64,000 nucleotides of DNA from the NCBI GenBank assembly GCA_002269645.1, contig NIVC01002687.1, positions 62,001-126,000 on the forward strand, written 5' to 3'. This DNA comes from Macrostomum lignano. Its lineage: Eukaryota. Positions within the stretch are counted from its first letter, which is position 1; the number at the start of each line of letters is the position of its first letter. Of the stretch, positions 4,558-31,026 are shown piece by piece. The notes under the pieces were generated by a model. The model saw only the letters and a program-made list of their open reading frames with translations, did not search any database and was not told the DNA's origin. The position numbers and the translations under genes are program-made.

Positions 4558-6643
4558 AATGTGAGGGTTTCACGAGAGATATTCAGACAGACATTCGAAA
4601 CGATCGTCTGTAACTTTAAACAAAATTGACCCGCTTCAACCATCTTTTTGGCAAATACTTACGCAAGTGTTGGGCGTCGAATAAGCTTTAATTTATTAAC
4701 TGAAGTAAAAATCCTTCTGACATACATTGATTTAAAAATTGCTTAGCAACACTAGCTCTGATTAGAAATCGCTTTAGTGTTGACTAAAATTGTTTTGATC
4801 GTAGCAGCCTAAAAGCAGATACTGGATTTAAAAATGCTTCGATTTACTCTATACGCATGTCTCAGCTTTAAAATGACACCTCAGGCGTCGCAAAAGACAG
4901 CTTTGATGCTGAGATATTCGACACTAAACATGCATTGCTTTGCGCAATCTCACATTCAGAAATTTCACTGATTTTTTGTCGATATTTGTGCAGTTGCCGT
5001 GTCCTTGTTTTTCATCAGAAACTTGTCAAATTCTAGTCATGTCCAGTTTAAACCTGGACTTCTCTTAAACTGTCTTAAGTATTTGATTTTTAATGATTCC
5101 TGCCTTTATATTGCATAGATTGTACCTGAGTCAGTGAGTCTGTGAGTGTACATTTGTACATATGGCAACCAATCATGACTTTTTCACCGCTTTGTGGTTC
5201 AAATAAATATACGAGTGTACGAGAAACATGTTCCAACTGTTATTGAGAGAAATTGACGTCGCGTTTATTAACAGTCAGTGGCAATTAATATGAAGCAAAT
5301 AGTTTATTGTTATGTTTTTACTTTTTTTGCGTGGCAATTCTGCTATCCAAATCGGAATGAGGTAAGCGGTGGGAATAAAATAAAAAGGAAGAATTTTTTC
5401 TACTGTTGTTGCAACCCAATAGCTATATGTACTTCAAACTTTTTAGATTGAACAGGCGATTTCTAATGTACTGCTAAGCTTTCCAATCCCTACGGACTAC
5501 AGTAGCAGTTCTTAACTTTTTTTCTGTCTTAACTTCTAGACTCGGAATTCGGAACAACCTAAGGAGCCGCATGAAAATATTTAATTGGATAAAGATATTT
5601 TCTAAAAACAGCTCAAGTCGTGACACATCTTCTTCTCACCTCAGTCCATCAACTGCTGCTCCTTCTGAGACCAAAGCGATCGTGAAAGTAAAACAGATCA
5701 GTTTAGATCCCATGGCCATGAATACAACCATTTCAATTGTGAACCTGCTTCGCTTACAAGTACGAGCACTAGCCTTCCATTTGATGCCATTAGCTCACTT
5801 AACTCTGAAATAGTTCAAGGACGGTTCCAAATGTTGAGATCTGACGTAGAAGCAGTCCAATTTGTGGAAATTTATCAACTGGACTCCATGAATCACTCCA
5901 ATGAAAGGCGGCGAATAGCTGCAGAATGCGTAAACAAGTTTAAGTGAGTCACAAAAACCCCATTTACTGTAACTACATACACTTGTACGTTAGCAAGGCT
6001 CCATGCGATGGTTAATAAATGGAGAAGTAGACAAGCATCTGAACAAATATTGAATAAAAATCAGTGAAGTTTCCAAATGTGAGTTTGAGCAAAGCAACGT
6101 TTAGTGTCGAATATCTCAGCATCAAAGCTGTCTTTTGCAATGCCTGAGGTGTCATTTTAAAGCTGAGACATGCGTATAGACATGACTAGAATTTGACAAG
6201 ATTCTGATGAAAAACAAGGACATGGCAACTGCACAAATATCGACAAAAAATCAGTGAAATTTCTGAATGTGAGATTGCGCAAAGCAATGCATGTTTAGTG
6301 TCGAATATCTCAGCATCAAAGCTGTCTTTTGCGACGCCTGAGGTGTCATTTTAAAGCTGAGACATGCGTATAGAGTAAATCGAAGCATTTTTAAATCCAG
6401 TATCTGCTTTTAGGCTGCTACGATCAAAAAACAATTTTAGTCAACAGTAAAGCGATTTCTAATCAGAGCTAGTGTTGCTAAGCAATTTTTAAATCAATGT
6501 ATGTCAGAAGGATTTTTACTTCAGTTAATAAATTAAAGCTTATTCGACGCCCAACACTTGCGTAAGTATTTGCCAAAAAGATGGTTGAAGCGGGTGAATT
6601 TTGTTTGAAGTTACAGACAATCATTTTGAATGTCTGTCTGAAT
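4558..6643. repeat. ~490-bp inverted repeat pair inside layer B: 4558-5043 versus 6181-6643 continued at 22230-22253; partial extra copy at ~6040-6180
   Basis: AATGTGAGGGTTTCACGAGAGATATTCAGACAGACATTCG (4558) is mirrored by ...AATGTCTGTCTGAAT (to 6643) plus ATCTCTCGTGAAACCCTCACATT (22230-22252). The right arm is split by the layer C insertion. No TSD found. Confidence 0.85.
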
Positions 6644-7009
6644 GGGTCTCCCTAAAACACGCCCCGCACCGCCCTGCAGCGCTACACATTAAAACAAATT
6701 GGACTATAACTAAAGACACTTCAGAATGCGTTTTCTGTTAAGCTTCAAGTTTTTATTAAATTTAGTTTTTTTACTTTGAAATATAAAATTCGGTGAACAA
6801 TAAGTGATATTAATAATAATATTAATAAAATAATAATATTATAATTAAATAATGAAAACGAGAATATAAAAAATAATAATATTTAAAAAAATAAATAAAG
6901 ATATTTATTCCATTACTATTTTAACTTTTCCTTGCAATCAAATACTGCATTGACAAAAAATGTTATAATGTGTAGCAGTTCGGGGCCCGGTGCGGGGCGT
7001 GTTTTAGGG

Positions 7010-10000
7010 GGGTCTCACTAAAAGACGGATCGGATCGGATCAGCTCGGATCGGATCCGATCCGATCCGATCCGAGTGTAACATACTAAAACAAAAACCTT
7101 AGTCTAATTCTTTTGCTTCTAAATATTTAAATACATTTAAATTTAGAGAATAAAGCCACCTAAGGACTAGAATAAAGGACACATCGTGCACGCGCAATTA
7201 ATTTTAATTCTGCAGTCTGCTGCAGCTTTATTCAAGTGGGTTGGTCGATGGGGCTTAGTTCTAGTGGTAGGCCTAGTAATATTAATAAGCTGGTTGGCTT
7301 GTATTTCTGCAAAACATTCCTAGTCTTTTTTTAGTCATTCTATTTTAAAGGCTGTTTAAATCTCTTTTCACATTCAGGATTTTGCATCCTCATACATCCT
7401 CATACTTTCACATTGAATTTTCAACTGTCTAAGGCCTTGGTAGGCCCTTCCTTACAAAAATACATTGTCTTAAACAATTGTATTTATTCCATTGACTGTC
7501 TTTAGACTATATTAATATATAATTTATATCATAAGGGAGTATATTAGACTCAGTTTTATAGTATTTCAATTTTTAGAGTATAGTATTCTGAATTTCTGGT
7601 TTTATTTAATAGGCTAATAAGTTGCTGTTGTTCATATAGCTAAGCATAAAGTATTTTAATTTTCCCATGCTATTTGATTGTCTTTACCATGTTTATATCT
7701 TTCAATATACCAAAAATAAAATCCCTCATATTTTATTGTGACATTTATTAACAATTGTTGACTGTCTACCAGTTAGGCCTATTCAGATTTACTATCTGAA
7801 GTTCCATAATTTATTGACTTTATTTCCTTCTCATTTTTCACTTTTCTCTTTTCTAATATATATATATACATTTGTTAATATTCATATTTGTTTTCTTCCC
7901 ATTTTTGCAAATCATTTACTAGGCCCTATCTACTACAATAGATCAAAACTGTACTATGCTAAATATCTAATATTTTAACCAACCTTTCAAAATACTTTCT
8001 TTTTAATATGTTATTACTTTGTAAATTTGAATTTATTATCCTTGCTTAATTTGATTTTTGCACTTTTTGAATCAAATTAATTTCCAAATTCTAAAAATAT
8101 ATGAATTATCTCATACATGTGTTATGTTAAAATTGAACTTCCAACAAAAAAAACCAAATATACTTTCTAATGTTGGCACAACAGGCACCATTTGCCTGAG
8201 CCAATCCTAACTACTACTACCACTCTACTCTTTAATTACTAGGCCTATTCATCTAGAGCAATAATGTTTCTTCTATAAGGTATATTATTGTTAAAGTATA
8301 TAGCCATAGAGACCTAGTCTAAATTCAATTCAACCCTATCTAACTTTATTCCAACTACAATCCAACTTTAATAGAACCTCTTCCAACTTTAATCAAATTT
8401 TAATCCAACATTATCCAACTCTTTCCTAAATCTTGTCACTCAATAAGGAACACTCAAAAGGAACACTTGGTAATCTTCTGTTTTCTTGTTTGCACTTACT
8501 CTCTCCATAGTCGCCTCCCTTGTCACCATATTTGGTCATTCTAGGCTTTCAACTTGAGAATCTAATCATTTCTAGGCACTCTGTGACGTCTGCTCTTGCT
8601 CAATCTGATCACCTGGACTCAAAACGAAAAAACTTGGTATTCTCTTGTTTTCTTGTTTGCACTTACTCTCTCCATAGTCGCCTCCCTTGTCACCATATTT
8701 GGTCATTCTAGGCTTCCAACTTGAGAATCTAATCATTTCTAGGCACTCTGTGACGTCTGCTCTTGCTCAATCTGATCACCTGGACTCAAAACAAAAACGT
8801 GATATTATCTTGTTTTCTTGTTTGCACTTACTCTCTCCATAGTCGCTTCCCTTGTCACCATATTTGGTCATTCTAGGCTTCCAACTTGAGAATCTAATCA
8901 TTTCTAGGCACTCTGTGACGTCTGCTCTTGCTCAATCTGATCACCGGGAATCAAAACGAAAAAACTTGGTATTCTCTTGTTTTCTTGTTTGCACTTACTC
9001 TCTCCATAGTCGCTTCCCTTGTCACCATATTTGGTCATTCTAGGCTTCCAACTTGAGAATCTAATCATTTCTAGGCACTCTGTGACGTCTGCTCTTGCTC
9101 AATCTGATCACCGGGAATCAAAACGAAAAAACTTGGTATTCTCTTGTTTTCTTGTTTGCACTTACTCTCTCCATAGTCGCTTCCCTTGTCACCATATTTG
9201 GTCATTCTAGGCTTCCAACTTGAGAATCTAATCATTTCTAGGCACTCTGTGACGTCTGCTCTTGCTCAATCTGATCACCGGGACTCAAAACGAAAAAACT
9301 TGGTATTCTCTTGTTTACTTGTTTGCACTTACTCTCTCCATAGTCGCTTCCCTTGTCACCATATTTGGTCATTCTAGGCTTCCAACTTGAGAATCTAATC
9401 ATTTCTAGGCACTCTATGACGTCTGCTCTTGCTCAATCTGATCACCTGGACTCAAAACGAAAAAACTTGGTATTCTCTTGTTTTCTTGTTTGCACTTACT
9501 CTCTCCATAGTCGCTTCCCTTGTCACCATATTTGGTCATTCTAGGCTTCCAACTTGAGAATCTAATCATTTCTAGGCACTCTGTGACGTCTGCTCTTGCT
9601 CAATCTGATCACCGGGACTCAAAACGAAAAAACTTGGTATTCTCTTGTTTTCTTGTTTGCACTTACTCTCTCCATAGTCGCCTCCCTTGTCACCATATTT
9701 GGTCATTCTAGGCTTCCAACTTGAGAATCTAATCATTTCTAGGCACTCTGTGACGTCTGTTCTTGCTCAATCTGATCACCTGGACTCAAAACGAAAAAAC
9801 TTGATATTCTCTTGTTTTCTTGTTTGCACTTACTCTCTCCATAGTCGCTTCCCTTGTCACCATATTTGGTCATTCTAGGCTTCCAACTTGAGAATCTAAT
9901 CATTTCTAGGCACTCTGTGACGTCTGCTCTTGCTCAATCTGATCACCGGGAATCAAAACGAAAAAACTTGGTATTCTCTTGTTTTCTTGTTTGCACTTAC

Positions 10001-10498
10001 TCTCTCCATAGTCGCTTCCCTTGTCACCATATTTGGTCATTCTAGGCTTCCAACTTGAGAATCTAATCATTTCTAGGCACTCTGTGACGTCTGCTCTTGC
10101 TCAATCTGATCACCTGGACTCAAAACGAAAAAACTTGGTATTCTCTTGTTTTCTTGTTTGCACTTACTCTCTCCATAGTCGCTTCCCTTGTCACCATATT
10201 TGGTCATTCTAGGCTTCCAACTTGAGAATCTAATCATTTCTAGGCACTCTGTGACGTCTGCTCTTGCTCAATCTGTTCACCGGGAATCAAAACGAAAAAA
10301 CTTGGTATTCTCTTGTTTTCTTGTTTGCACTTACTCTCTCCATAGTCGCCTCCCTTGTCACCATATTTGGTCATTCTAGGCTTCCAACTTGAGAATCTAA
10401 TCATTTCTAGGCACTCTGTGACGTCTGCTCTTGCTCAATCTGATCACCGGGACTCAAAACGAAAAAACTTGGTATTCTCTTGTTTTCTTGTTTGCACT
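7010..10498 (+). repeat. Left TIR of element D: ~1.47-kb unique arm plus ~12 x 167-bp tandem array (~8475-10498)
   Basis: Reverse complement of 19668-22205. Identical 63-codon pseudo-ORFs recur every 167 bp (8852, 9019, 9186 ... 10355). Confidence 0.95.
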
Positions 10499-10656
10499 AA
10501 CTCGGGCGTAAGTTTATATTTGGTTTATTTAAACCCATTTGCTTCCTCTGGTGACTCTAGCCTTCTGTTTGGTGTTCAGATTAATTCTAGAGAATTTGCC
10601 AGTGGAATTGAATTAAAATTTTGAATTTCGTTCAGAATTTTTACTTGAAATAATTA

Positions 10657-11775
10657 ATGGCTGCTTTCCTTTCTAAACTTTGCTTCATGGCATTTGCAAA
10701 GGACGCTTTTGCGCTATTCATTGGGCAAGGATGTTTGCCATCCCCCTTTCCTAAAGAGGACTTTGTTGTTGGAGTACGACTTATGGCTTCGGATGTTCGG
10801 GAAGCGGCTGTAACTCTTGGGTTAAAAGCGCTGAGTCGTTCTAGTATTCGTAATGTCGAAGGTCTTGAATTAAAGTACTTGACCGAAAGTGGGTTAAGCA
10901 TTGCGTTTGGTAATGGCGTCGCTATCACTCGAAAGAAGGGATCATCGACTGAATGCCGACAATCAGTTTCAGCGCGATGCAAGGCTGCGGACATGGGTCG
11001 AAAGTGGTTGGAGAGTAGCAATTGGGAGATGGTGAGTGATAGTACTTATCACCCTGCTTTTAAGCCTTGCAAGCAGCAGGTAAAACTGCACCTGCAGGAA
11101 GCTATCCGACACCTTGAGATGGCCTATTCTATTTCGAAATCACCATCCAATAGTGTTATTCGCCCAAGTTTAGTATGCGTTCGACAGGCTTTAGCAGAAT
11201 TGAACCAGATGAATGATAACCCGATTGAGATGGTGACGCTAACCAATGATGAGGTTAAGAAAGCTGAGGAAGCGAAAAAGGCTGAAGAAGCAAAGAAGGC
11301 TGAGGAAGCGAAGAAGGCTGAAGAAGCAAAGAAGGCTGAGGAAGCGAAGAAGGCTGAAGAAGCAAAGAAGGCTGAGGAAGCGAAGAAGGCTGAAGAAGCA
11401 AAGAAGGCTGAGGAAGCGAAGAAGGCTGAAGAAGCAAAGAAGGCTGAGGAAGCGAAGAAGGCTGAAGAAGCAAAGAAGGCTGAGGAAGCGAAGAAGGTTG
11501 AAGAGGCAAAGAAGGCTGAGGAAGTGAAGAAGGCTGAAGAGGCAAAGAAGGCTGAGGAAGTGAAGAAGGCTGAAGAAGCGAAGAAGGCTTGTGAAGCGAA
11601 GAAGGCTGGTAAAGCGAAGAAGGCTGAGAAAGCGAAGAAGGCTGAGAAAACGAAGAAGGCTGGTGAAGCGAAGAAGGCGAAGGAGGCTCAGGTATTGCCT
11701 GGGCCAAGACGCAGGCGTGCAGCATTTTCTGTTCTTCTACAGGAGCCAGTACAAAAGCAACTAAAGCGAAAGTAA
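10657..11775 (+). CDS. Orphan cargo protein of element D (372 aa): ~200-aa unique N-terminus plus 24 KKAEEA-type hexapeptides
   Basis: Uninterrupted ATG-to-TAA ORF. 18-bp codon repeats span 11257-11688, alternating in third positions. A possible in-frame 51-bp intron lies near 11692-11742. Confidence 0.7.
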   Translation: MAAFLSKLCFMAFAKDAFALFIGQGCLPSPFPKEDFVVGVRLMASDVREAAVTLGLKALSRSSIRNVEGLELKYLTESGLSIAFGNGVAITRKKGSSTECRQSVSARCKAADMGRKWLESSNWEMVSDSTYHPAFKPCKQQVKLHLQEAIRHLEMAYSISKSPSNSVIRPSLVCVRQALAELNQMNDNPIEMVTLTNDEVKKAEEAKKAEEAKKAEEAKKAEEAKKAEEAKKAEEAKKAEEAKKAEEAKKAEEAKKAEEAKKAEEAKKAEEAKKAEEAKKVEEAKKAEEVKKAEEAKKAEEVKKAEEAKKACEAKKAGKAKKAEKAKKAEKTKKAGEAKKAKEAQVLPGPRRRRAAFSVLLQEPVQKQLKRK

Positions 11776-11925
11776 GCTGAAGAGCATTTTTGTGAAAACA
11801 TCGCTCAATCTGATATTTAATATCACTGTGTGTACCTGGTGATTTTTTCCGATCTACTAATTGCTCACTAATAGTGCTGTTTTAATAATCTTTGTACTTT
11901 TGCCTAAGGAAATGTATCCAGAAGT

Positions 11926-12509
11926 AATATTGCATTTGACAAGCTGAGTGAGAATTTGGACATGCAAAATGAGAATCGCCCATCTGCTACATTGTATGGT
12001 CGCGAATGGTGGCTCAATTAAAGGCATAGGCACCTGGACATGTAAAATGAGAATAAGACATCCAAAATGGGAATGGATGGTTTCGCAATCAAGATTCATG
12101 CCAGTCCTGAATAAGCATTTTCTCTCTCCCTCTATCCAGTGTACATTTACATGTACATGCACATTGGTTCAATTCTCAATAATTGCTTACTGCCCCACCT
12201 TTTATTTACTCACCTCACCTGTTTTGCAGTTCAGCATCAACCCCATTTTGGCTGTACATCCATTTGCCACTCACTTCAGAGCGCCAACCCTCTCTGTGCC
12301 CCTTCTTACCTTCTTGCCCAGTTTACCCGCCCCCAAGTTTACAACAGATAAAGACACCCAGTCCCATTTTGGATGTCTAAATTCTCATTTTGCATGTCCA
12401 AGTGCCTGTGTTTATAATTGAGCCACTATTCGCGACCATATAATGTGGGAGATGGGCGATTCTTATTTTGCATGTCCAAATTCTCATTTGGCTTGTCAAA
12501 CGCAATACT
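11926..12509. mobile_element. MITE-like element, copy 1 (inside element D)
   Basis: Long TIRs TATTGCATTTGACAAGCTGAGTGAGAATTTGGACATGCAAAATGAGAATCGCCCATCT and AGATGGGCGATTCTTATTTTGCATGTCCAAATTCTCATTTGGCTTGTCAAACGCAATA. TSD unclear. Confidence 0.7.
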
Positions 12510-12775
12510 TATTCAGGGAGGCAATGGTATGACAGCTTCGTTTTCCGTACTTACTTTAACTACGACTAGATTTGGCTTTGGCTTTAGTATCAATATTTTT
12601 TACGAGTACCAATATACTAAACTATATTCTTATGCCGTTAAAGTAGTAGCTCTGAATCCTTTATGCAGCTTGTATAATGTACTTTTCGTTACTAACACGC
12701 GTAAAGTATGTGTGTAAAGTATAAAATCGTTTAAACATTCATGATTCAGGCAACACTCTGAAAGTTTGATACTAA

Positions 12776-13176
12776 TTAAGAAAATGAGGAAATAAAAACT
12801 CGTAATCTTTCACAAATGAGATGGTGATGGTGAGACAATGATGAGGCGAAGAAGGCATTTGAGAAATTGACTGTGCAATAATCAAGCAGCAAAAAATCCG
12901 ACAGCTTCACTGCGGCTTTCTCTTTTACTCTTTTACAAAACGATTTTGTAAAAGTTGGAGTTGAAGTTTTCGAACCTGTGTAAATGTTTGCTTTTTATTT
13001 TGTTTGAAGATTGGAATAATAGCACGAGTAACATTGATTTTTATCATGAAACAGTAAGCATGAGCGTTGCAAAAACAACAAAGTTTCGTGTCATTACTTT
13101 TTCCTGACAGGTGACATCTCAAATAACATTCCAGGTACTGTAATTCAGTATCAATTTTTCGTCTAACATCACTCAT
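12776..13176 (-). pseudogene. Candidate small Cys/His-rich cargo ORF interrupted by an 8-bp tandem duplication
   Basis: The 83-aa ORF MSDVRRKIDTELQYLECYLRCHLSG...LCCFCNAHAYCF stops just after GTAAAAGA x2 (+ strand TCTTTTAC at 12921-12928 and 12929-12936). Removing one copy gives a 130-aa ORF ending at TAA 12776-12778. Confidence 0.3.
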
Positions 13177-13375
13177 TTGATTCTTAAGATCACGTAACGT
13201 GTAGATGTATGGGATTATCTAGTATGTATCCCAAGTTAAAAATGAATATATAATTAATAAAAGCACATTTTCCTGCTTACTCTACAGTCTCCTATCACGG
13301 TGCACAGTCTAGGAGTAAAGATTGACCAACAAGTGCCAAAAATTTTCATTCAAGTACAGAATGTACGATGCATCT

Positions 13376-13748
13376 AATACTGCATTTGACAAGCTAAATG
13401 AGAATTTGGACATGTAAAATGAGAATCGCCTATCTGCTACATTGTATGGTCGCGAATGGTGGCTCAATTATAAACACAGGCACTTGGATATGCAAAATGA
13501 GAATTAGACTTCCAAATGGGACTGGGTGGCTTTACTTGTTGTAAACTTGGGGGCGGGTGAACTGGGCAAGAAGATAAGGAGGGGCACAGAGGGTTGGTGC
13601 TCTGAAGTGAGTGGCAAATGAATGTACAGCCAAAATGGGGTTGATGTTGAACTGCAAAACAGGTGAGGTGAATAAATAAAAGGTGGGGCAATAAACAATT
13701 TTTGATAATTGAAGTAATGTGCATGTACTGTACATGTAAATGTACACT

Positions 13749-13795
<47 letters not shown>

Positions 13796-13849
13796 GCTTA
13801 TTCAGGGCTGGCATGTCCAAATTCTTATTTAGCTTGTCAAATGCAAATA
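13376..13849. mobile_element. MITE-like element, copy 2, internally inverted relative to copy 1; carries a (GA)n tract
   Basis: Same TGCATTTGACAAGC termini. Its interior 13450-13750 is the reverse complement of ~12130-12440. Confidence 0.7.
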
Positions 13850-14306
13850 TCAAATGCATACTGAAAAAATACATTTGCATTAAGCAGTCTAGTATGATCA
13901 GCGGGAAGTTCAATTTGGACGCCTGTGAAGCGCAGTTGCAAAGCAAAAGCTATCAGGTTAGGGTTGCTAGGGTTGGGATTATAGTCGTTAGAATTGGGGT
14001 TGATAAGATGCCATTGAATAGAATGACCGACCTAAGCAGTTGTTATGACTGACAATCGTTTTGTCGGACAAATCTTTTATTGATCTTCACTTCTAAAGAC
14101 ACTATAAAGCACTGTGGTATCTATTCACACCGTTACAAATATTTTAAGTATTTAAAGTGGAGGGACAAAATTGTGCATAAAAAGTAAAAAAAGGGAGCGT
14201 AAAATCCGAATTTATATCGTAGGATGTTATGAGACACTATCTACTGTGTGACAGCTTTCTACGAATGCAAATGATTGGAACGAGCGGACAAAGCGATCGG
14301 TAAATG

Positions 14307-15484
14307 TTACCCATAAAATAGAGCGCAGCAATTGTGCTTGATGTCAGCAAAAGCGGACGACAAAGAAACTGCGCGAACGCTAGAATCGCTAATAAAGATG
14401 CATTTGTACCCATCATAAAATGTGTAGGCAGCGTAATGACCATTTTCGGCTGAGCGACCGAAATGAACAACGGCTGCGCGAAGGTTGTACGAGCGGCCGT
14501 TAAGCTGAAGACTTAGCTCCACAGGCATTGGCGAAGTTATCTTGCGCGAGCCATGTTTGGAATCGTAACTGACCCGGCCAATTCCGACACAGAGAATCTT
14601 CGATAGTGATGCCAGCGTCTGATTGTGACTGCACTGACCGGTCGTACAATTCTCACACAAAATATCCGATCGATTCGACGAAGATAACAGAGACGCACGA
14701 ATCAGATGAGGAAAGTCGATATCATCATCCCTGATAATTTGCAGGCGCAGGATCGTAATAGTTTCATTGCGGTCCAGTCGTGTAACATATCCGCACGATG
14801 AGCACACGCGCGTCGATGACGTCTGACAAGTAGAGTTTTGAAGGAGATAGAACCATGGCATAAACATAATATGCAATGCAAATAACATAATCTCGAGCAA
14901 GCTATTTGTGTCAGTGTCTGCGTATCAAAGCACGTATTAAATTACCCAATTGTGATTTAACGCAGAAAAATATTGCACGAGCATAAAATATAGAGCAGGG
15001 AAAAATAAACTTCACAGAGCAGGGAAACATACTTCGCATTTAAAGAGCTCCTCAATTTCTCGAAGTGAAAGAATTCCAGTAAGGACCTCCAGCACACAAT
15101 TTTGTTGCTTAGGATCCATTTTCATTTGATTCGCACACCATAAAAAGGCAGCGGTGTGAAATTTGATAATCACTTGTTTGTCTCGGCTCAAAATGGCGTT
15201 CAGCAAAAAGACAACCGGAGGCGATTCTGGAAAAACTGGGAGCAACGACCCAACAGCTGCTGCGATGCACTGACAGGCAGCGTTGAAGGCACAGTACGTT
15301 CCGGTTGGATTCTCAAGTCCCAAATTCAATGGTAAAGCGAGGGGCGCCGCTGGCGACTCAAGGGGCGCCGCTGACCTCACGAGGGGCGCCGCTGGCGACT
15401 CAAGGGGCGCCGCTGACCTCACGAGGGGCGCCGCTGGCGTCACGATGGATGCCGTGGCTGCCACTTTACTTGCTCTGACGGATT
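14307..15484 (-). CDS. Ubiquitin-specific protease (peptidase C19/USP) domain encoded inside element D; 5' exon unresolved
   Basis: Exons 15484-15033 and 14822-14307, with a 210-bp GTATGT...CTTGTCAG intron in phase 0. Motifs: Cys box GLENPTGTYCAFNAACQCI, QQNCVLEVL (QDAxE-like), fingers CSSC/CENC, His box YNLRAAVVHFGRSAENGHYAAY, ISDSSV, terminal ALFY. Confidence 0.85.
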
Positions 15485-16661
15485 CTGCAGTCAGGGAAAA
15501 GCAGGTTTATGTAGCTAAGTGAAGTGAGCACTAGTTTAGTGTTAGGTGCCCCCTTTGTCAGCTGTGCCCTGCGCCCTTCTGAGCTGTTGGCTGCCGCTGG
15601 CCGCAGCTCTCCCTCTCGCTCTCCCTCTCTCCCGCTCCCTTCTCTGCCTTTCCCTCCCTCGTTGTCCTTTTGTCTGCCTGCGCTCCCTTCCCCCCCCCTT
15701 TCCGGTTCGTTTGCGTTCCCAGCGTCTGAGGTTCTCCGCTCAGCCTGTCCTTGATTCTTTGTCTGTCTCCTTCCCCCCTTTTTGTGTGACTGCGTTCTTT
15801 TGGCTCGAGTCCAGCTTGTTCCGGCTGTCCTCTCTCTGTCTGGCCGTACGGGAGCGGATCACGTGCCCCAGGCGCTCTGTCTTTTTGCGCTCCCTTGTGC
15901 AATCTCGTGTGTCAGGCTCTAAATTAGGAAAGGCGTCCTTGCCTCTAAAGTTGGGGGTTCCGCGCCTGTTTCTAAATTTAGATCTGAATCACGCCAGATT
16001 GGGGGCAGTGAGAGCGGCCTTGCGTACTCTGGCGCAATGGGGAGGCTTTCACTGTATGGTGAAATCGATCCGCTACCTTATAAGTACGGGCCTCTCGTGC
16101 CTCTGGTTGGCAACCCTCTGTGAAACCTCTCGTTTACCTGTGCGTTAACCCTTCTGATAACTGCTCTCTTGGAAGTCCAGCGCAGCTTGCGCTAGGCCTT
16201 AGCCAACCTATCTGATTTCTGATCCATCTGCGACTGTGTGTCCTCGAGTGCGCTAAATCCCAACCGAACTAACAGAGACTAGCACAGTTCCTCATCCCCG
16301 CACTTGAGCCCGGCAGGACCGCTGACGAGGTGTGCACCGGTACGAACTGTCAAATCTGCACGACGTGCTGAGTTCTCGTGTCTCGTTTATTTCGCTCAGC
16401 CCGGAGTCTCCCTCACTGAAGGACAAGATCCGAGCGAGCTGGTGGCAGCACTACCTACTCTACAAGTATCCTGCGCCAGGAGACCTACCAGGCCATCGCG
16501 AGTCAACATCGAAAAAGCCTGTACATAATTGGTGGCAGCGGTGGGATTCCAAGACCTACGGCTAGGCCACCTGAGACAAATAAGAAACCACCAACACCAA
16601 CAACTATACTTCATAAGCAACGTATGAATTGTCGGCTGATATAGCAGCCTGTGGATGAAAA

Positions 16662-19379
16662 TTACGAGCGTTTAAAGTTCATTAATATTGTCATACCTCC
16701 GGTGACAAGTGAAATAAGCTGCACGGCGGGCCCTCCTGGCTGAACGCCGGTCACCATCGGTCGAGCAGGAGGCGATGCTGCGGATTTATCTAATTGCACG
16801 ATTCGTATACAGGACACCATTGCTGAACTGCCGTGCGTCGCCATCCGTTTCACGGGCACCACTGATGTCGTCCCATTGGCCATCGTGGAAACTTTTCGCT
16901 TTCCAATTGCGGAGTGTGCGTTGGAAACTGTGATAATAGGCTGCTTTTTAGCGTCATTCCGCTCGTTACGAGTCCAATGCTTCCTGCCAGGTCTACCTGC
17001 AGGTTTTCGAAAACGCTTTGAAAGCTGGCTGAGATTTTTGCTTGGTTGATTTAGCTTAAATTGGAAACCAGTCGCGCGTTTAACTGCAGCAATGTGTGCG
17101 CAATTATGTCTCAGTACACATGAACACAGCGGTGGGCTTTGTCTAAACGTAACAACGTTGCTCACTCCAAAGCTGTTTACAAGAAACTCCGACGTATCCG
17201 AAAGAAACGTGACTTTACTGTTCAAGGTGAAGTCTAGCAGACTCCCGGTTTCTGCCGCTGCTGCTGCGTCAGTATTCACAGCCGGTGCCGGGCCAACATC
17301 CCTGTCAGCAGCCGGTGACGAATCGCGGGTTGGGCCTCCTTCAGGGCCAGCAGGCGGCGAATCGCGGGTTGGACCTCCTTCAGGGCCAGCAGGCGGCGAA
17401 TCGCGGGTTGGACCTCCTTCAGGGCCAGCAGGCGGCGAATCGCGGGTTGGACCTCCTTCAGGGCCAGCAGGCGGCGAATCGCGGGTTGGACCTCCTTCAG
17501 GGCCAGCAGGCGGCGAATCGCGGGTTGGACCTCCTTCAGGGCCAGCAGGCGGCGAATCGCGGGTTGGACCTCCTTCAGGGCCAGCAGGCGGCGAATCGCG
17601 GGTTTCGGTCAGTCTGCCGCTAGCGATTATCTGCAATACTTCCTCGGGAGACTTAGTTGGAATAAGTGTGACATCGCCTGGATCCATTCTCAGCCGTTGA
17701 TACTCCTCTTTGAGTCGGAACTTTCCGGTGCCAGTGACGCCACGAAGAATGTCGTTAAAGAACGATGTCGACAGGCAGTAGAGGCTGATGAGAAGGCCAT
17801 CAAGCGGTTTCACTTGGTGTGCAGTAAACCTTTTTAGTAGCGCATTTACAGACTCGCTTTGGTTTTGCGTCATTCCTGAGATCGGTGAGTAGTGGTTACC
17901 GAGGAGCCACTTCCCGTAATATTTGGGAATTCTAGGATGTAAATTTCGTTCAAAGTACAGCACGAAGTCTTTAGACCACTGCTTCTTCAGATCGGCGTAC
18001 AATTTGTTATAATCAGAAACTCCACTGCATTTCAGGAGACAGGTCAGATCTCGTGAATAGGCGCACTCATCAGCGAGTGTTCCATTGTTGTTACGAACCC
18101 ATTGGCGTACGTCGTCTCGCAGGTGATTCCAGCAGCCAAAGAACGCAATACCTGGCAGAACTGAGTGCATCGCGTTGCGCAGCGCATGTTCAGCATCCAT
18201 CACGCAAGCCAACGGCACTTGGCTCAGTGCAGGGAGCAACTCATTGGCATATGTCCATAGTTCCTGATGGCGGGCTTCAAATTTTCTTTCGTGTATCAGA
18301 AACATGATCGGGCATACCGGGTTGTTTTCGAAGATAGTTAACCGCATGACGAGTGTCGACACATGAGCATCGGTAAGATTGAAGCCGGTATCGTACGACA
18401 AAAGTTGGGCGCTGTCTGCTAAATTCAATATGGTGTTCGCCATATCTAACAGATTTCTTTCTCCAGCAACGATTGACAGATCCGGAAACGTTCGAATAGA
18501 CCGCGTGAAATCGGGCAGCTCATAAGCAATAAGATGCACGTTAAAAAGCGCATCCTTACTCAATCGAGACACACAATCAACGGCATGTTTAGCATTGCCC
18601 ACCTGCTTCTCGTTTCTTATGCCTAACGCAGGGTGCGACTGCTCCGTTGCAGCGTGCAAACGATAGTACGTCGATGGAGACGTCCCTTCTTTCCTTAATT
18701 GCTGCGCCAATTGGCCGAGGACAGACGGACAAGTTCGAATGTACTGACTGCCATTTATGGAGTTCCCATGCGTAACTTGCTCAGGTTGCACTTGCGAGTC
18801 CCCCATGTAGTGAATCAAAGTGCGGCTAAAATTAGAGAAAATTTTGTGGGAATAAGGGAAAGGATAAGAATCGTCAATGCCTGTGTTCAAAATACCTTGT
18901 ATCGACAGTTCCGTCCGAATTAATGAGTCGGTAGGCTAGTCGTTTGAAACGGTTGTCAACTTGTCTAGGGACTGATGAAATCTTCGTTGAAAACGATAAC
19001 TTCATAAATGCTGGCTTTGATCTGAAATATGAAAAATCCCGCGTATTTAGCTAAGAGAGAAAAGTAGAACAATACAAATGGAAAAACAATAGAAAAGTAT
19101 AAAAATTGCACATGAGGTAAACTACTAAAAGACACCTAAAACAGTTGTAACTTACTTTGGCAACCTCTGGTGACCACAGTCTATCCATGAGTAGCCATCG
19201 CAACGCCAGTCGTCAATGGCATTTGACCCAGCATTCGATGTCACAAACAGAATAATAGAACCTGAGGGTGGTCGAAACTTCAGCCGCTCCTCGGATTCCT
19301 CAGTCGCTCGAATAAGCCTTAACACATCAGACGATTGTAATGCAGCATGCTGAACGCCGAGTGTGACACAGTATGACAT
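16662..19379 (-). CDS. MULE-family DDE transposase with SWIM zinc finger (837 aa if unfused)
   Basis: Exons 19379-19156, 19021-18896 and 18825-16662 with canonical GT-AG and matching phases. N-terminal motifs DWRCDGYSW, LIHYMGD and THGNS. Catalytic motifs LSYDTGF (D), CVMDAEHAL (D), CWNH (CxxH) and TQNQSESVNALLK (E). SWIM finger CSCVLRHNCAH and a basic GRPGRK motif. No stops or frameshifts. Confidence 0.88.
17320..17612. repeat. In-frame 39-bp tandem repeat (about 7 x TRDSPPAGPEGGP) inside the transposase
   Basis: TCAGGGCCAG recurs every 39 bp from 17341, between the catalytic domain and the SWIM finger. Confidence 0.95.
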
Positions 19380-19667
19380 TGCATAACGCTGTAAATAAAC
19401 AGAAAATCACATTGTACGCCTGCAAGACATGGCTCGACAACACGCAGCTGTGCAAGGCCAAGGCCGCCTAGACAGCTATGAATCAAAACAGAAAAGCTAG
19501 TTGAGGTAAGACTGGAGTGATATGGTGTTGGAGAACGCAAGATTGAAGTTGGACAAGGTGGATTGACGTTGGTTAAAGTGGAAAAACTAAGCGCGGAAAC
19601 ATTAAAACATGGCAGTGGGAAATTAGCTATGGTTGGTGCAAAAATAGAGACATTAACTAACATACAG

Positions 19668-22205
19668 AAGAATGACCAAATATGGTGACAAGGGAAGCGA
19701 CTATGGAGAGAGTAAGTGCAAACAAGAAAACAAGAGAATACCAAGTTTTTTCGTTTTGATTCCCGGTGATCAGATTGAGCAAGAGCAGACGTCACAGAGT
19801 GCCTAGAAATGATTAGATTCTCAAGTTGGAAGCCTAGAATGACCAAATATGGTGACAAGGGAAGCGACTATGGAGAGAGTAAGTGCAAACAAGAAAACAA
19901 GAGAATACCAAGTTTTTTCGTTTTGAGTCCCGGTGATCAGATTGAGCAAGAGCAGACGTCACAGAGTGCCTAGAAATGATTAGATTCTCAAGTTGGAAGC
20001 CTAGAATGACCAAATATGGTGACAAGGGAAGCGACTATGGAGAGAGTAAGTGCAAACAAGAAAACAAGAGAATACCAAGTTTTTTCGTTTTGAGTCCCGG
20101 TGATCAGATTGAGCAAGAGCAGACGTCACAGAGTGCCTAGAAATGATTAGATTCTCAAGTTGGAAGCCTAGAATGACCAAATATGGTGACAAGGGAAGCG
20201 ACTATGGAGAGAGTAAGTGCAAACAAGAAAACAAGAGAATACCAAGTTTTTTCGTTTTGAGTCCAGGTGATCAGATTGAGCAAGAGCAGACGTCACAGAG
20301 TGCCTAGAAATGATTAGATTCTCAAGTTGGAAGCCTAGAATGACCAAATATGGTGACAAGGGAGGCGACTATGGAGAGAGTAAGTGCAAACAAGAAAACA
20401 AGAGAATACCAAGTTTTTTCGTTTTGAGTCCCGGTGATCAGATTGAGCAAGAGCAGACGTCACAGAGTGCCTAGAAATGATTAGATTCTCAAGTTGGAAG
20501 CCTAGAATGACCAAATATGGTGACAAGGGAAGCGACTATGGAGAGAGTAAGTGCAAACAAGAAAACAAGAGAATACCAAGTTTTTTCGTTTTGAGTCCAG
20601 GTGATCAGATTGAGCAAGAGCAGACGTCACAGAGTGCCTAGAAATGATTAGATTCTCAAGTTGGAAGCCTAGAATGACCAAATATGGTGACAAGGGAGGC
20701 GACTATGGAGAGAGTAAGTGCAAACAAGAAAACAGAAGATTACCAAGTGTTCCTTTTGAGTGTTCCTTATTGAGTGACAAGATTTAGGAAAGAGTTGGAT
20801 AATGTTGGATTAAAATTTGATTAAAGTTGGAAGAGGTTCTATTAAAGTTGGATTGTAGTTGGAATAAAGTTAGATAGGGTTGAATTGAATTTAGACTAGG
20901 TCTCTATGGCTATATACTTTAACAATAATATACCTTATAGAAGAAACATTATTGCTCTAGATGAATAGGCCTAGTAATTAAAGAGTAGAGTGGTAGTAGT
21001 AGTTAGGATTGGCTCAGGCAAATGGTGCCTGTTGTGCCAACATTAGAAAGTATATTTGGTTTTTTTTGTTGGAAGTTCAATTTTAACATAACACATGTAT
21101 GAGATAATTCATATATTTTTAGAATTTGGAAATTAATTTGATTCAAAAAGTGCAAAAATCAAATTAAGCAAGGATAATAAATTCAAATTTACAAAGTAAT
21201 AACATATTAAAAAGAAAGTATTTTGAAAGGTTGGTTAAAATATTAGATATTTAGCATAGTACAGTTTTGATCTATTGTAGTAGATAGGGCCTAGTAAATG
21301 ATTTGCAAAAATGGGAAGAAAACAAATATGAATATTAACAAATGTATATATATATATATTAGAAAAGAGAAAAGTGAAAAATGAGAAGGAAATAAAGTCA
21401 ATAAATTATGGAACTTCAGATAGTAAATCTGAATAGGCCTAACTGGTAGACAGTCAACAATTGTTAATAAATGTCACAATAAAATATGAGGGATTTTATT
21501 TTTGGTATATTGAAAGATATAAACATGGTAAAGACAATCAAATAGCATGGGAAAATTAAAATACTTTATGCTTAGCTATATGAACAACAGCAACTTATTA
21601 GCCTATTAAATAAAACCAGAAATTCAGAATACTATACTCTAAAAATTGAAATACTATAAAACTGAGTCTAATATACTCCCTTATGATATAAATTATATAT
21701 TAATATAGTCTAAAGACAGTCAATGGAATAAATACAATTGTTTAAGACAATGTATTTTTGTAAGGAAGGGCCTACCAAGGCCTTAGACAGTTGAAAATTC
21801 AATGTGAAAGTATGAGGATGTATGAGGATGCAAAATCCTGAATGTGAAAAGAGATTTAAACAGCCTTTAAAATAGAATGACTAAAAAAAGACTAGGAATG
21901 TTTTGCAGAAATACAAGCCAACCAGCTTATTAATATTACTAGGCCTACCACTAGAACTAAGCCCCATCGACCAACCCACTTGAATAAAGCTGCAGCAGAC
22001 TGCAGAATTAAAATTAATTGCGCGTGCACGATGTGTCCTTTATTCTAGTCCTTAGGTGGCTTTATTCTCTAAATTTAAATGTATTTAAATATTTAGAAGC
22101 AAAAGAATTAGACTAAGGTTTTTGTTTTAGTATGTTACACTCGGATCGGATCGGATCGGATCCGATCCGAGCTGATCCGATCCGATCCGTCTTTTAGTGA
22201 GACCC
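19668..22205 (-). repeat. Right TIR of element D: ~6.5 x 167-bp tandem array (~19668-20740) plus ~1.47-kb unique arm
   Basis: Mirror of the left TIR. The only arm difference I noticed is (TA)7 versus (TA)6 near 21345/7857. Confidence 0.95.
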
Positions 22206-22996
22206 GTTTTAGGGAGCCTTTGTCTGAATATCTCTCGTGAAACCCTCACATTGCTCACATTTCAGACAACTGGGAATGTATATTTTAATATCTTACATAA
22301 GGCTATAGCTATAGGCTATATCGCCTATATGACTTAATAGGATTTAAAGAGTTATTTTGTTTCATATTTTAAGGCAGTGCATAAAAAATAGCTTAAGCAT
22401 GGTTAAGCCTTTAAAGAAAAATGGTTATAAGACCGCACCTAAACCGCACCTACTTTTTTAATTTCAGGGTGCGATTTTAAAATTTAGGGTGCATACGCAC
22501 ACTCTGCGCACAAAAAAAAAACCCTGACCATATAGCTGCCATATCATATCATACATTTATGATTTAATGTTCTGAGTTGAGTTCAGAGTCTTTATAGTTA
22601 GAAGTCATATTATACAACTATATCATATCCATCAAGCATCAAGTAACTTATTGATCTTCCAAGTTCCACTTTAATCTAAATAAGAAGAGAAACAAGAACT
22701 TGGGGTAAACAAAATACAACCAGGGAAAGGGCCTTCAGTGGCCCAGCCTTATCCTGTAGCCATCCATCCTCCAGGCCTCCTTGTACCCACCACCTCATGC
22801 AGAGGCAGAGCAGATTGTTAAAGTCAATAAAGTGTACATACACTACGGTGTATATACATACACAAAGCTCTCATTTCCCTCTAGCCTACCTAGCCAAACC
22901 CAATCATATACCCAAAGCCCAGACCTCACCCCAGCTTATCTTAGCAAGTTTCATTTCTCTGCCTATCCCAAGAGCCAGGGTCTGACTGCTAGTGCT

Positions 22997-27337: not shown

Positions 27338-27750
27338 TCTGATCAGTCTGGTTGGGTGTGGGATCAGTCAGGTTGGGGGTGGGATCAGTCTGGTTGGGGA
27401 TGGGATCAGTCTGGTTGGGGGTGGGATCAGTCTGGTTGGGGGATGGGATCAGTCTGGTTGGGGGATGGGATCAGTGTGGTTGGGGATGGGATCAGTCTGG
27501 TTGGGGATGGGATCAGTCTGGTTGGGGTGGGATCAGTCTGGTTGGGGGATGGGATCAGTCTGGTTGGGGGATGGGATCAGTGTGGTTGGGGTGGGATCAG
27601 TCTGGTTGGGGGATGGGATCAGTCTGGTTGGGGGTGGGATCAGTCTGGTTGGGGGTGGGATCAGTCTGGTTGGGGGATGGGATCAGTGTGGTTGGGGATG
27701 GGATCAGTCTGGTTGGGGGATGGGATCAGTCTGGTTGGGGGTAGGATCAG
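27338..27750. repeat. 21-23-bp G-rich minisatellite starting at the OGFOD3 stop codon
   Basis: About 18 copies of GGGATCAGTCTGGTTGGGG(G)AT. Confidence 0.95.
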
Positions 27751-30584: not shown

Positions 30585-30851
30585 GCTGTCTGTCTGTGAC
30601 TCACTTCCTGTCTGTGACTCACTTCCTGTCTGTGACTCACTTCCTGTCTGTGACTCACTTCCTGGCTGTGACTCACTTTCTGGCTGTGACTCACTTCCTG
30701 TCTGTGACTCACTTCCTGGCTGTGACTCACTTCCTGTCTGTGACTCACTTCCTGGCTGTGACTCACTTCCTGGCTGTGACTCACTTCCTGTCTGTGACTC
30801 ACTTCCTGTCTGTCTCACTGACTGTCTGTCGTCTGTCTGTGACTCACTTCC

Positions 30852-30897
<46 letters not shown>

Positions 30898-30972
30898 GTC
30901 TATTTGTCTATTTTTCTGTCTGCATGTCTGTCCGTCTATCTATTTGTCTGTCCGTGTCTGTCTGTCTGTATA

Positions 30973-31025: not shown

Positions 31026-31026
31026 G

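What the first reader, a model, noticed from the sequence alone, without database searches (positions are those of the whole stretch)
7010..22205. Young giant Foldback-Mutator transposon carrying a multi-gene accessory kit (transposase, USP deubiquitinase, KKAEEA protein)
Seen: a 15.2-kb element with a perfect 9-bp TSD, 2.5-3.5-kb TIRs whose unique 1.47-kb arms are almost identical, and an intact spliced transposase. It also carries two intact non-transposase genes arranged convergently, each side starting just inside a TIR satellite array (KKAEEA ATG ~160 bp from the left array, transposase ATG ~290 bp from the right array). Established: maize MuDR drives mudrA and mudrB convergently from TIR promoters. 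Arabidopsis VANDAL elements carry a ULP-type protease (VANB) and an anti-silencing protein (VANC) that binds tandem repeats in the element. Inference: this could be an animal counterpart, a self-propagating module of transposase, chromatin or protein-stability modifier, and array-binding factor. I do not know of a described animal Mutator with this combination.
Basis: partly seen in the sequence, partly recalled or inferred. Interest (0 to 1): 0.92.

Follow-up and report, generated by a model that had tools for sequence, protein, structure and literature searches.

The report
Mutator transposon with deubiquitinase-fused transposase
This is a real, very recently inserted 15.2-kb Mutator-type jumping gene whose transposase seems to be spliced onto a ubiquitin-removing enzyme and which carries a second conserved gene of unknown fold. 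It is a new variant of a known theme (transposases joined to ubiquitin/SUMO proteases), not a new kind of element.

Summary
The structure is confirmed. The element spans window 7010-22205 and is flanked by a 9-bp duplication, GTTTTAGGG. Three paralogous empty sites match the reconstructed site with 0/160 mismatches. A 98-99% identical contig, probably the other allele, lacks the element. The unique 1.45-kb TIR arms differ by one 2-bp indel. Inside them lie 167-bp arrays of 12.2 and 6.5 copies.

The gene content needs correcting. The USP is not a free-standing cargo gene. It has no start codon before its Cys box, and its first exon begins at a strong acceptor. A phase-matched donor lies 10 codons before the transposase stop. 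Splicing would give an open 1106-aa transposase-USP fusion.

A paralogue (C37) and two database proteins (P0092, P0014) carry both parts in one ORF.

The KKAEEA gene (ORF2) runs convergently to the fusion gene. Its N-domain gave a moderately confident model with no known fold match.

At least five diverged families in this genome share the layout ORF2 -> <- USP-transposase, with between-family dN/dS of about 0.1-0.3. Relatives elsewhere carry Ulp1, PHD or Macro domains instead.

Ulp1-bearing animal Mutators are already described, so this is a new variant of a known kind. Only one complete copy exists.

The parts
7001..7009 (.). Left target-site duplication GTTTTAGGG
   Evidence: Read directly. 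A single copy is present at three paralogous empty sites.
22206..22214 (.). Right target-site duplication GTTTTAGGG
7010..8464 (+). Left TIR, unique outer arm. It starts GGGTCTCACTAAAAG and holds a palindromic (CGGAT)n tract at 7026-7074.
   Evidence: Compared with the reverse complement of 20749-22205: 0 mismatches and one 2-bp indel. Tract.
8465..10503 (+). Left TIR, inner 167-bp tandem array (12.2 copies)
   Evidence: TRF. The array occurs only in this element and its sister copies.
10657..11775 (+). ORF2 ('KKAEEA protein'), 372 aa. It has a conserved N-terminal alpha/beta domain (about aa 10-190), an 18-bp x 23 KKAEEA repeat (11257-11687) and a basic tail.
   Evidence: ORF. Forty matches in the genome at 29-97% identity, most at 38-50%. 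Alignment A1. AF2 model pLDDT 79. No match in Pfam, PDB or BFVD.
11918..12517 (+). Hairpin module, copy 1, 143 bp after the ORF2 stop. It has a stem of about 170 bp and a CT-rich loop.
   Evidence: Inverted repeats. RNA fold -286 kcal/mol, z = -17.6. Found only in MULE-USP loci of the genome.
13375..13854 (-). Hairpin module, copy 2 (partial), about 450 bp after the USP stop, inverted relative to copy 1
14307..14822 (-). Exon 4 of the transposase-USP gene: zinc-ribbon cysteines, His box GHYAAY, the DSSV Asp, and the stop at 14307-14309
   Evidence: Pfam UCH. Alignment to USP15/USP12. Acceptor chosen by phase and by paralogue exon starts.
15033..15484 (-). Exon 3: 42-bp coding repeat (15338-15439), Cys box GLENPTGTYCAFNAACQ and the QQN..E motif. 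There is no ATG before the Cys box.
15520..16613 (-). Nested probable solo LTR (1,094 bp, TG...CA, 4-bp TSD CTTA at 15516-15519 and 16614-16617), lying inside the proposed intron 3
   Evidence: Absent from the sister copy. Dispersed repeat with same-orientation pairs about 9.35 kb apart. Coordinates.
16662..16664 (-). Stop codon that ends a 795-aa transposase-only product if intron 3 (16696-15485) is retained
16697..18825 (-). Exon 2: DDE core (D216, D282, E395; CWNH at aa 305), a 39-bp x 7.3 coding repeat (17319-17604), SWIM-like CSCVLRHNCAH, and a tail. The donor GAG|GTATGA lies at 16696.
   Evidence: Homologues at E = 1e-53 to 1e-76.
19156..19379 (-). Exon 1: ATG at 19379 and a WRKY/CG-1-like N-terminal domain. 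Donor AAA|GTAAGT.
   Evidence: CG-1 is found in 11 of 50 relatives.
19669..20748 (-). Right TIR, inner 167-bp array (6.5 copies)
20749..22205 (-). Right TIR, unique outer arm
4450..7009 (.). Left part of the 2,872-bp host TIR element into which the Mutator inserted. The rest lies at 22215-22526. Its 7-bp TSD ACCATAT is at 4443-4449 and 22527-22533.
   Evidence: High-copy family at 99-100% identity. Absent from the near-identical contig C363.

Best explanation
Window 7010-22205 is a putatively autonomous cut-and-paste transposon of the Mutator (MULE) superfamily with Foldback-like TIRs. Each TIR has a unique 1.45-kb arm plus a 167-bp array. The insertion is very recent.

The element carries two convergent genes that start just inside the TIR arrays.

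(1) A four-exon gene on the minus strand. Its product has a WRKY/CG-1-like N-terminal DNA-binding domain, a DDE/CxxH catalytic core, a repeat linker and a SWIM-like zinc finger. Splicing of a short intron that contains the transposase stop codon adds a complete USP (peptidase C19) deubiquitinase domain with Cys, His and Asp in place. Retention of that intron would give a 795-aa transposase alone. Splicing gives a 1106-aa fusion.

(2) ORF2 on the plus strand. It has a conserved alpha/beta domain of unknown fold, a KKAEEA repeat and a basic tail.

Shown: the boundaries, the TSD and the insertion polymorphism; the domain content; conservation of the layout across diverged families; and single-ORF transposase-USP proteins elsewhere.

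Inferred: the splice itself (no RNA data); that the transposase binds the TIRs; and that the USP acts at the transposition complex. It may protect the transposase from ubiquitin-dependent turnover, or erase ubiquitin marks of chromatin or DNA-damage signalling at the break. This matches the role proposed for Ulp1/OTU domains of other transposases. The function of ORF2 is unknown. My guess is a helper or regulator analogous to MURB or VANC.
For: Boundaries and youth:
- TSD and three exact empty sites.
- TIR arms identical apart from a 2-bp indel.
- Contig C363, 98-99% identical in the flanks, lacks both the element and the 2.87-kb repeat that hosts it.

MULE identity:
- DDE, CWNH and SWIM motifs.
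- PF10551 scores 20.7 bits, below the cut-off.
- Matches at E = 1e-53 to 1e-76 to proteins, several of which score above the PF10551 cut-off.
- The TSD is 9 bp.

USP identity:
- PF00443 scores 47.4 bits against a cut-off of 23.9.
- Cys box, His box and the DSSV Asp align with USP15/USP12.

Fusion:
- There is no ATG before the Cys box.
- The acceptor CCCTGACTGCAG|AA and the donor GAG|GTATGA are phase-compatible and give an open 1106-aa frame.
- The same sites in the sister copy give a 114-nt intron.
- The C13/C2719b family has the donor TAC|GTAAGT four codons before its stop, with a matching acceptor in a different phase.
- The C37 paralogue has the DDE core, SWIM and USP Cys box in one 704-aa ORF.
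- P0092, from a 27.7% GC contig of another organism, has the transposase and a full USP in one ORF. P0014 has the transposase, SWIM and the Cys box.

Conserved layout:
- ORF2 -> <- USP-Tnp is seen in the window, C2719, C13, C1753 and C1176. ORF2 -> <- Tnp is seen in C2608 and C2284.

Selection:
- Between families, dN/dS is 0.12-0.22 for the USP and 0.18-0.34 for ORF2.
Against: - No transcript data exist, so the splice is predicted only.
- The exon 3/4 and exon 1/2 junctions were picked by phase and by paralogue comparison.
- The 1.1-kb LTR in the intron could impair splicing in this particular copy.
- PF10551 is below Pfam's threshold for the window protein itself.
- Only one complete copy and nine termini exist in a 764-Mb assembly, so current activity is unproven.
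- Identical TIR arms could partly reflect gene conversion.
- C363 could be a recent duplicate rather than the allele.
- No activity data exist for the USP.
- ORF2 has no homologue outside this genome in the five external loci checked.
Confidence: 0.7

Rival explanations
1. One reading: the USP is an independent third gene (cargo) with its own promoter, transcribed separately from the transposase.
For: The transposase ORF has its own stop codon at 16662-16664. In this copy 1.2 kb separate that stop from the USP exon, and a sense-oriented LTR, which could carry a promoter, lies just upstream.
Against: The USP frame opens only at 15506, downstream of the LTR, and has no ATG before the catalytic Cys. 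The exon begins at a strong acceptor. Without the LTR the spacer between the transposase stop and the USP frame is only about 60 bp. Single-ORF fusions exist in C37, P0092 and P0014.
Confidence: 0.15
2. One-off capture of host gene fragments (Pack-MULE-like). On this view the USP and KKAEEA sequences are passengers without function for the element.
For: MULEs are known to capture host fragments (PMC6446971). Within-family recent copies evolve neutrally, with dN/dS of 0.8-1.0.
Against: The same parts, in the same order and orientation, occur in at least five families whose proteins are only 26-60% identical. The catalytic residues are kept. Between-family dN/dS is 0.1-0.3. Neutral decay of individual copies is normal for transposons.
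Confidence: 0.03
3. The element is an immobile relic, or a domesticated locus, whose identical arms are kept by gene conversion. On this view it is not a recently transposed active element.
For: Only one complete copy exists and all relatives are truncated. There is a nested LTR and there are two internal hairpin modules.
Against: There is a perfect TSD and exact empty sites. The element is nested in a repeat family whose copies are 99-100% identical. It is absent from a 98-99% identical contig and from C219. All ORFs are open.
Confidence: 0.1

Closest known systems
Maize MuDR (Mutator superfamily)
   Same: MULE DDE transposase, long TIRs and a 9-bp TSD. Two genes transcribed convergently, starting at the inner TIR ends (mudrA/mudrB; established knowledge, and PMC6446971).
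   Different: MURA has no protease domain. ORF2 was not compared with MURB because no MURB sequence was at hand. The TIRs here are 2.5-3.5 kb with a 167-bp array, and the transposase has a CG-1/WRKY-like N-terminus.
Ulp1 (with or without PHD)-bearing Mutator transposons: hydra and lancelet MuDR families in Repbase, plant KI-MULEs (PMC2836005), and the clam protein P0006
   Same: The same transposase clade (32-37% identity). A C-terminal cysteine protease acting on ubiquitin-like modifiers is fused to, or encoded by, the element. Twenty of 50 long relatives carry Peptidase_C48 and nine carry PHD.
   Different: The protease here is USP/C19 (clan CA), not Ulp1/C48 (clan CE). There is no PHD and no Macro domain. 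ORF2 was not found next to the external relatives.
Foldback / Phantom elements (Drosophila FB, Meloidogyne Tm1; PMC3169594)
   Same: TIRs containing tandem repeats of variable copy number, a 9-bp TSD, and a MULE-type transposase.
   Different: Phantom transposases have an N-terminal FLYWCH finger, which was not detected here. Here the outer 1.45 kb of each TIR is unique and only the inner part is an array.
Other transposases joined to deubiquitinase-type domains: Ginger1 (OTU or Ulp1), Helentrons (OTU/VTD; PMC9741609), and T. vaginalis XP_001314237 (transposase_11 + Peptidase C19; PMC2836005)
   Same: A DNA-transposon protein carrying a Ub/Ubl-deconjugating protease. The Trichomonas case even has the same protease family (C19).
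   Different: These belong to different transposase superfamilies (integrase-like, RepHel, IS4/IS5-like).
Arabidopsis VANDAL21 (VANA/VANB/VANC)
   Same: A MULE with accessory genes beside the transposase. VANC binds noncoding repeats of its own element (PMC5735166 and PMC10398659 abstracts).
   Different: VANDALs lack TIRs. No homology of ORF2 to VANC was tested. The Ulp1 domain sits in the VANC-type Kaonashi gene, and VANB is of unknown function.

Membership tests
Mutator / MULE superfamily | MULE-type DDE transposase (PF10551 / IS256-like, with the C/DxxH motif) | tested here: met
   D216, D282, E395 and CWNH were read directly. PF10551 scores 20.7 bits, below the cut-off of 27.6. However, the protein matches at E = 1e-53 to 1e-76 to proteins several of which pass it (P0006 scores 33.3 bits), and 33 of 50 relatives match at E <= 0.001.
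Mutator / MULE superfamily | Target-site duplication of 8-11 bp, usually 9 | tested here: met
   A 9-bp GTTTTAGGG, proven by three empty sites.
Mutator / MULE superfamily | Long terminal inverted repeats | tested here: met
   TIRs of 3.5 and 2.5 kb. The unique arms are identical apart from a 2-bp indel.
Foldback / Phantom subgroup | TIRs built from tandem repeats with variable copy number between the two ends | tested here: met
   The 167-bp unit occurs 12.2 and 6.5 times. The outer 1.45 kb is not repetitive.
Foldback / Phantom subgroup | [quoted passage not shown] | tested here: not met
   No FLYWCH hit was found. There is a weak CG-1 hit (E = 0.0065-0.08). Among 50 relatives, 11 have CG-1 and 1 has FLYWCH.
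Foldback / Phantom subgroup | Phylogenetic placement of the DDE core with FB4/Phantom transposases | not tested
   No reference FB/Phantom sequences were available in the tools.
USP / UCH deubiquitinases (peptidase C19) | Match to the family profile over the catalytic core | tested here: met
   PF00443 scores 47.4 bits, E = 2.6e-12, against a cut-off of 23.9, on the spliced domain. One exon alone gives E = 4.6e-10.
USP / UCH deubiquitinases (peptidase C19) | Catalytic Cys box, His box and Asp/Asn present | tested here: met
   GLENPTGTYCAFNAACQC aligns with the GLSN-LGNTCFMNSAIQC of USP15. GHYAAY and DSSV align with GHYTAF and DSSV. There is one extra residue before the Cys.
USP / UCH deubiquitinases (peptidase C19) | Isopeptidase activity on ubiquitin | not testable with these tools
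   This needs a Ub-AMC, Ub-PA or di-ubiquitin cleavage assay.
Ulp1-bearing Mutators (KI-MULE, hydra/lancelet MuDR) | Peptidase_C48 (Ulp1) domain encoded by the element | tested here: not met
   No PF02902 hit was found in any ORF of the element. It is present in relatives P0006 and P0013, and in 20 of 50 long relatives.
MuDR-type two-gene elements | Second gene convergent to the transposase, both starting near the TIRs | tested here: met
   The ORF2 ATG is 154 bp inside the left array and the transposase ATG is 290 bp inside the right array. The arrangement is repeated in seven loci.
MuDR-type two-gene elements | Second gene homologous to mudrB | not tested
   No MURB sequence was at hand. ORF2 has no match in Pfam, PDB or BFVD.
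VANDAL-type anti-silencing system | Accessory protein (VANC) that binds repeats of its own element and removes silencing | not testable with these tools
No sequence or structural evidence supports or contradicts it.

The most novel reading that the evidence does not exclude
In this transposase clade the C-terminal module is interchangeable among erasers and readers of protein modification: USP here, and Ulp1, Macro or PHD in relatives. That suggests the transposase must locally undo ubiquitin, SUMO or ADP-ribose signalling, either at the chromatin it cuts or on itself, in order to transpose or to escape host control. ORF2, together with the conserved 3' hairpin module, would then be a previously unknown helper or self-regulation system specific to the USP-bearing lineage.
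Probability: 0.25. Interest if true: 0.8.

Novelty: new variant of a known kind. Interest (0 to 1): 0.55.

Why it matters
Protease domains of the ubiquitin/SUMO system have been noted in several transposon superfamilies since about 2006-2010: Ulp1 in MULEs and Ginger1, and OTU/VTD in Helentrons. Their role in transposition has never been shown.

This locus offers a useful test case. It is a single, fully open, very recently inserted and apparently hemizygous copy. Its deubiquitinase is of the well-understood USP class, and splicing may switch it on or off. Decayed sister copies and many diverged paralogous families in the same genome provide comparison.

The locus also shows that within one transposase clade the appended module has been exchanged (USP, Ulp1, PHD, Macro). 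That argues for a selected function rather than accidental capture.

For genome annotation, USP-like and ORF2-like 'genes' in this genome should be flagged as transposon-borne.

Tried and rejected
- Whole-transposase word search returned one hit because the coding repeats swamped the words. It was repeated on residues 75-475.
- A search for USP relatives among proteins of fusion length found nothing.
The single-ORF C37 paralogue was used instead.
- ORF2 N-domain: Pfam gave only a low-complexity hit. A PDB profile search gave E = 0.61. Foldseek gave E = 0.058 against PDB and 0.011 against BFVD, with TM about 0.2. No assignment was possible.
- No ORF2-like or USP-like sequence was found around four external relatives (L071, L075-L077). 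A profile search for ORF2 that also covered L088 found nothing.
- dN/dS between the window and the sister copy was uninformative, because the copies are 98.4-99.3% identical with 0-7 changes of each kind per region.
- The C13 paralogue has no long TIRs within the 16 kb held.
- A suspected Ulp1-like ORF after the C2608 transposase got no support from Pfam or tblastn.
- An LTR-promoter-driven USP was rejected, because the frame opens only downstream of the LTR and has no ATG.
- The 600-bp inverted-repeat modules were first taken for MITEs. This was rejected because they occur only in MULE-USP loci.
- Rfam found nothing in 4000-25000.

Full report
OBSERVATION

The element is real and its limits are exact. 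It begins at 7010 (GGGTCTCACTAAAAG...) and ends at 22205. It is flanked by GTTTTAGGG at 7001-7009 and 22206-22214.

The left flank belongs to a high-copy repeat: 596 first-look candidates, of which 40 were scored at 99-100% identity. Three other copies of that repeat (C93, C26, C1701) read left flank + one GTTTTAGGG + right flank, with 0 mismatches over 160 bp. These are paralogous empty sites, so the 9-bp duplication is not a chance match.

The unique TIR arms (7010-8464 and 20749-22205) differ only by one 2-bp indel. Inside them lie arrays of a 167-bp unit, with 12.2 and 6.5 copies. This unit occurs nowhere else in the 764-Mb assembly except in the sister copies.

YOUTH

Contig C363 is 98-99% identical to the unique DNA on both sides of the element. 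Read across the site, C363 joins window 4449 to 22527. It therefore lacks both the Mutator element and the 2,872-bp TIR element in which the Mutator is nested (7-bp TSD ACCATAT). A more distant duplicate, C219, is also empty.

The insertion is thus younger than a repeat insertion that is itself absent from the probable other allele. C363 could instead be a recent duplicate. Either way, an empty state exists.

COPY NUMBER

The terminal 24-mer occurs nine times in the genome at up to 3 mismatches. Two are the window's own ends. The others are single ends on C89/C2647, C150, C2719/C2830 and C301/C3040.

The sister copy on C2719 is 96-99% identical internally but only about 93% identical in the TIR arm. 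It has lost the transposase-side arm and has a roughly 195-bp insertion in exon 1. It also has stops or frameshifts, and 4.3 kb of foreign DNA in the ORF2-side array. C89 is a TIR fragment. So there is one complete copy.

TRANSPOSASE

The minus-strand gene starts at 19379. Exon 1 has a WRKY-like DGYSW motif and a weak CG-1 match. It ends at AAA|GTAAGT. The only phase-compatible acceptor that avoids stops is TTTTAG|C at 18825.

Exon 2 carries LLSYDTGF, CVMDAEH, GCWNHL and QNQSESVN (the DDE triad plus CxxH). It also carries a 13-aa x 7 repeat and CSCVLRHNCAH, which is SWIM-like.

PF10551 scores 20.7 bits, below Pfam's cut-off of 27.6. However, the core matches 13 database proteins at E = 1e-53 to 1e-76, and several of these pass the cut-off. 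Together with the 9-bp TSD and long TIRs, membership in the Mutator superfamily is secure. FLYWCH, the Phantom/Foldback hallmark (PMC3169594), was not found.

THE USP IS PART OF THE TRANSPOSASE GENE

Two ORFs, 15506-15015 and 14924-14310, encode a USP core. The spliced domain scores 47.4 bits on PF00443 (cut-off 23.9). Its Cys box, His box and DSSV Asp align with USP15 and USP12.

The frame has no Met before the Cys box, and it begins at CCCTGACTGCAG|AA. Ten codons before the transposase stop lies GAG|GTATGA, in the complementary phase. Joining the two gives an open 1106-aa protein.

The window differs from the sister copy by a 1,094-bp insert at 15520-16613. The insert has TG...CA ends and a 4-bp TSD CTTA. 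It belongs to a dispersed family whose members often lie in same-orientation pairs about 9.35 kb apart, so it is most likely a solo LTR. Without it the intron is 114 nt, and both splice sites are conserved in the sister copy.

Independent support for the fusion:
- The C13/C2719b family (44-51% protein identity) has TAC|GTAAGT four codons before its stop. A phase-matched acceptor lies before its USP exon, in a different phase from the window's.
- The C37 paralogue has the DDE core, SWIM and the USP Cys box in one uninterrupted 704-aa ORF.
- An exhaustive search with that ORF (944 hits at E <= 0.001) found P0092. It comes from a contig with 27.7% GC, so from another organism. It has the transposase, SWIM and a complete USP in one ORF.
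- The same search found P0014, which has the transposase, SWIM and the Cys box in one ORF.

I therefore read the USP as a C-terminal domain added by splicing. Intron retention would give a 795-aa transposase alone. No RNA data were available, so the splice remains a prediction.

ORF2

ORF2 spans 10657-11775 (372 aa). It has a conserved N-domain, 23 KKAEEA units and a basic tail. The N-domain has 40 matches in the genome at 29-97% identity, most at 38-50%.

An alignment of eight paralogues gave an AlphaFold model with pLDDT 79 and pTM 0.61. The model has no significant match in the PDB or BFVD, and no sequence match in PDB or Pfam. Its function is unknown.

CONSERVED ARCHITECTURE

The order ORF2 -> <- USP-transposase recurs at C2719, C13, C1753 and C1176. 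The order ORF2 -> <- transposase recurs at C2608 and C2284. Transposase followed by USP occurs at C1798, C1023, C1564, C1223, C3789, C37 and C2719b.

Between families, dN/dS is 0.12-0.22 for USP exon 4 and 0.18-0.34 for ORF2, with dS saturated. Between recent copies within a family it is 0.8-1.0. These are therefore selected parts of the elements, not one-off captures.

RELATIVES ELSEWHERE

External transposase relatives (32-37% identity) carry other C-terminal modules. P0006, from the clam Ruditapes philippinarum, has CG-1 + MULE + Peptidase_C48 + PHD. P0013 has Macro + C48 + PHD. P0001 and P0007 have Macro.

Of 50 long hits of the exhaustive search, 20 have C48, 9 have PHD, 11 have CG-1 and only 1 has UCH. 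No ORF2-like sequence lies near the five external loci examined.

COMPARISON WITH THE LITERATURE

Bao, Kapitonov and Jurka (PMC2836005) record Ulp1 domains in Mutator transposons of hydra, lancelet and plants, and align Ulp1+PHD of Mutator transposases. They also record a Peptidase C19 domain fused to an IS4/IS5-type transposase in Trichomonas. They propose a role in DNA-repair signalling.

Helentrons carry OTU/VTD deubiquitinases (PMC9741609). The survey of MULE diversity (PMC6446971) mentions no protease. I found no paper describing a MULE-USP fusion or ORF2. Repbase and Dfam could not be searched.

The class is therefore known. The USP version, together with ORF2 and the 3' hairpin module, is a new variant.

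MECHANISM

Shown by sequence: a DDE cut-and-paste element with a 9-bp staggered target cut.

Inferred: the N-terminal domain binds the termini or the array. The USP acts in cis at the transpososome, either stabilising the transposase or erasing ubiquitin marks on chromatin or repair factors. ORF2 assists or regulates.

VERDICT

The interpretation needs correcting to two genes, one of them a fusion, and its novelty claim is too strong. Interest is moderate.

Noticed in passing
window 11918-12517 (+) and 13375-13854 (-); also C13:662545-662851, C382:162349-162633, C947:14340-14650, C2657:69099-69386: A module of about 600 bp folds into a stem of about 170 bp (RNA dG -286 kcal/mol, z = -17.6). 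It lies just downstream of each of the two convergent genes, and the two copies are inverted relative to each other. It is not a dispersed MITE. All 12 candidates in the genome are in MULE-USP loci. In four other families a copy at 70-72% identity lies 200-300 bp after the USP stop, in the same orientation. It may be a conserved 3' hairpin, serving as a terminator, a small-RNA source or a regulatory element.
   Followed up: partly
window 15520-16613: A nested 1,094-bp probable solo LTR (TG...CA, TSD CTTA) lies in the transposase-USP intron. Its family has 793 first-look candidates, with same-orientation pairs about 9.35 kb apart (three in a row on C4250).
   Followed up: partly
window 4450-7009 + 22215-22526: A 2,872-bp TIR element (ends ACTGGGT10...A10CCCTG, 7-bp TSD ACCATAT) hosts the Mutator. 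Its family is very young, with 596 candidates and scored copies at 99-100% identity. This insertion is absent from contig C363.
   Followed up: partly
window 22997-23918: A 922-bp hAT-like MITE (10-bp TIR TAGGGATTCC, 8-bp TSD CTAGTGCT, internal ATCCCGGG repeats) is also absent from C363. The window haplotype therefore carries three insertions that the other contig lacks.
   Followed up: partly
L071, L076 (P0001, P0007, P0013) and L075 (P0006, Ruditapes philippinarum): MULE transposases of the same clade in other organisms are fused to a Macro domain (an ADP-ribose binding/hydrolase fold), or to Ulp1 + PHD. The C-terminal module appears to be exchangeable.
   Followed up: partly
window 19156-19379; P0006 residues 168-275; 11 of 50 relatives: The N-terminal DNA-binding region of these transposases hits Pfam CG-1, the DNA-binding domain of CAMTA transcription factors, with E down to 1.8e-11 in relatives. 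This hints at a link between CG-1 and WRKY-like domains of transposases.
   Followed up: no
window 7010-8996 versus C2719:124966-127000: Between the window copy and its sister, the TIR arm is about 7% diverged while the internal genes are only 1-4% diverged. The arms evolve faster, or were exchanged with another element.
   Followed up: no
window 11257-11687, 15338-15439, 17319-17604; paralogues L052, L053, L054, L029: Every linker of the element's proteins is an in-frame tandem repeat (18, 42 and 39 bp). Each paralogous family has a different repeat at the same positions.
   Followed up: no
L060 (C1117:177178-180609): Here the USP and its repeat linker follow a 313-aa ORF that is not recognisably the same transposase tail (it reads ...HVTNAAVESWFSWGK...). 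The USP module may be attached to a different partner at this locus.
   Followed up: no
window 25000-42000: This region has strongly skewed composition (AT skew down to -0.61). Long ORFs are open in several frames (for example 30575-32305), and they give only low-complexity Pfam noise. It is probably satellite or simple-repeat DNA.
   Followed up: no
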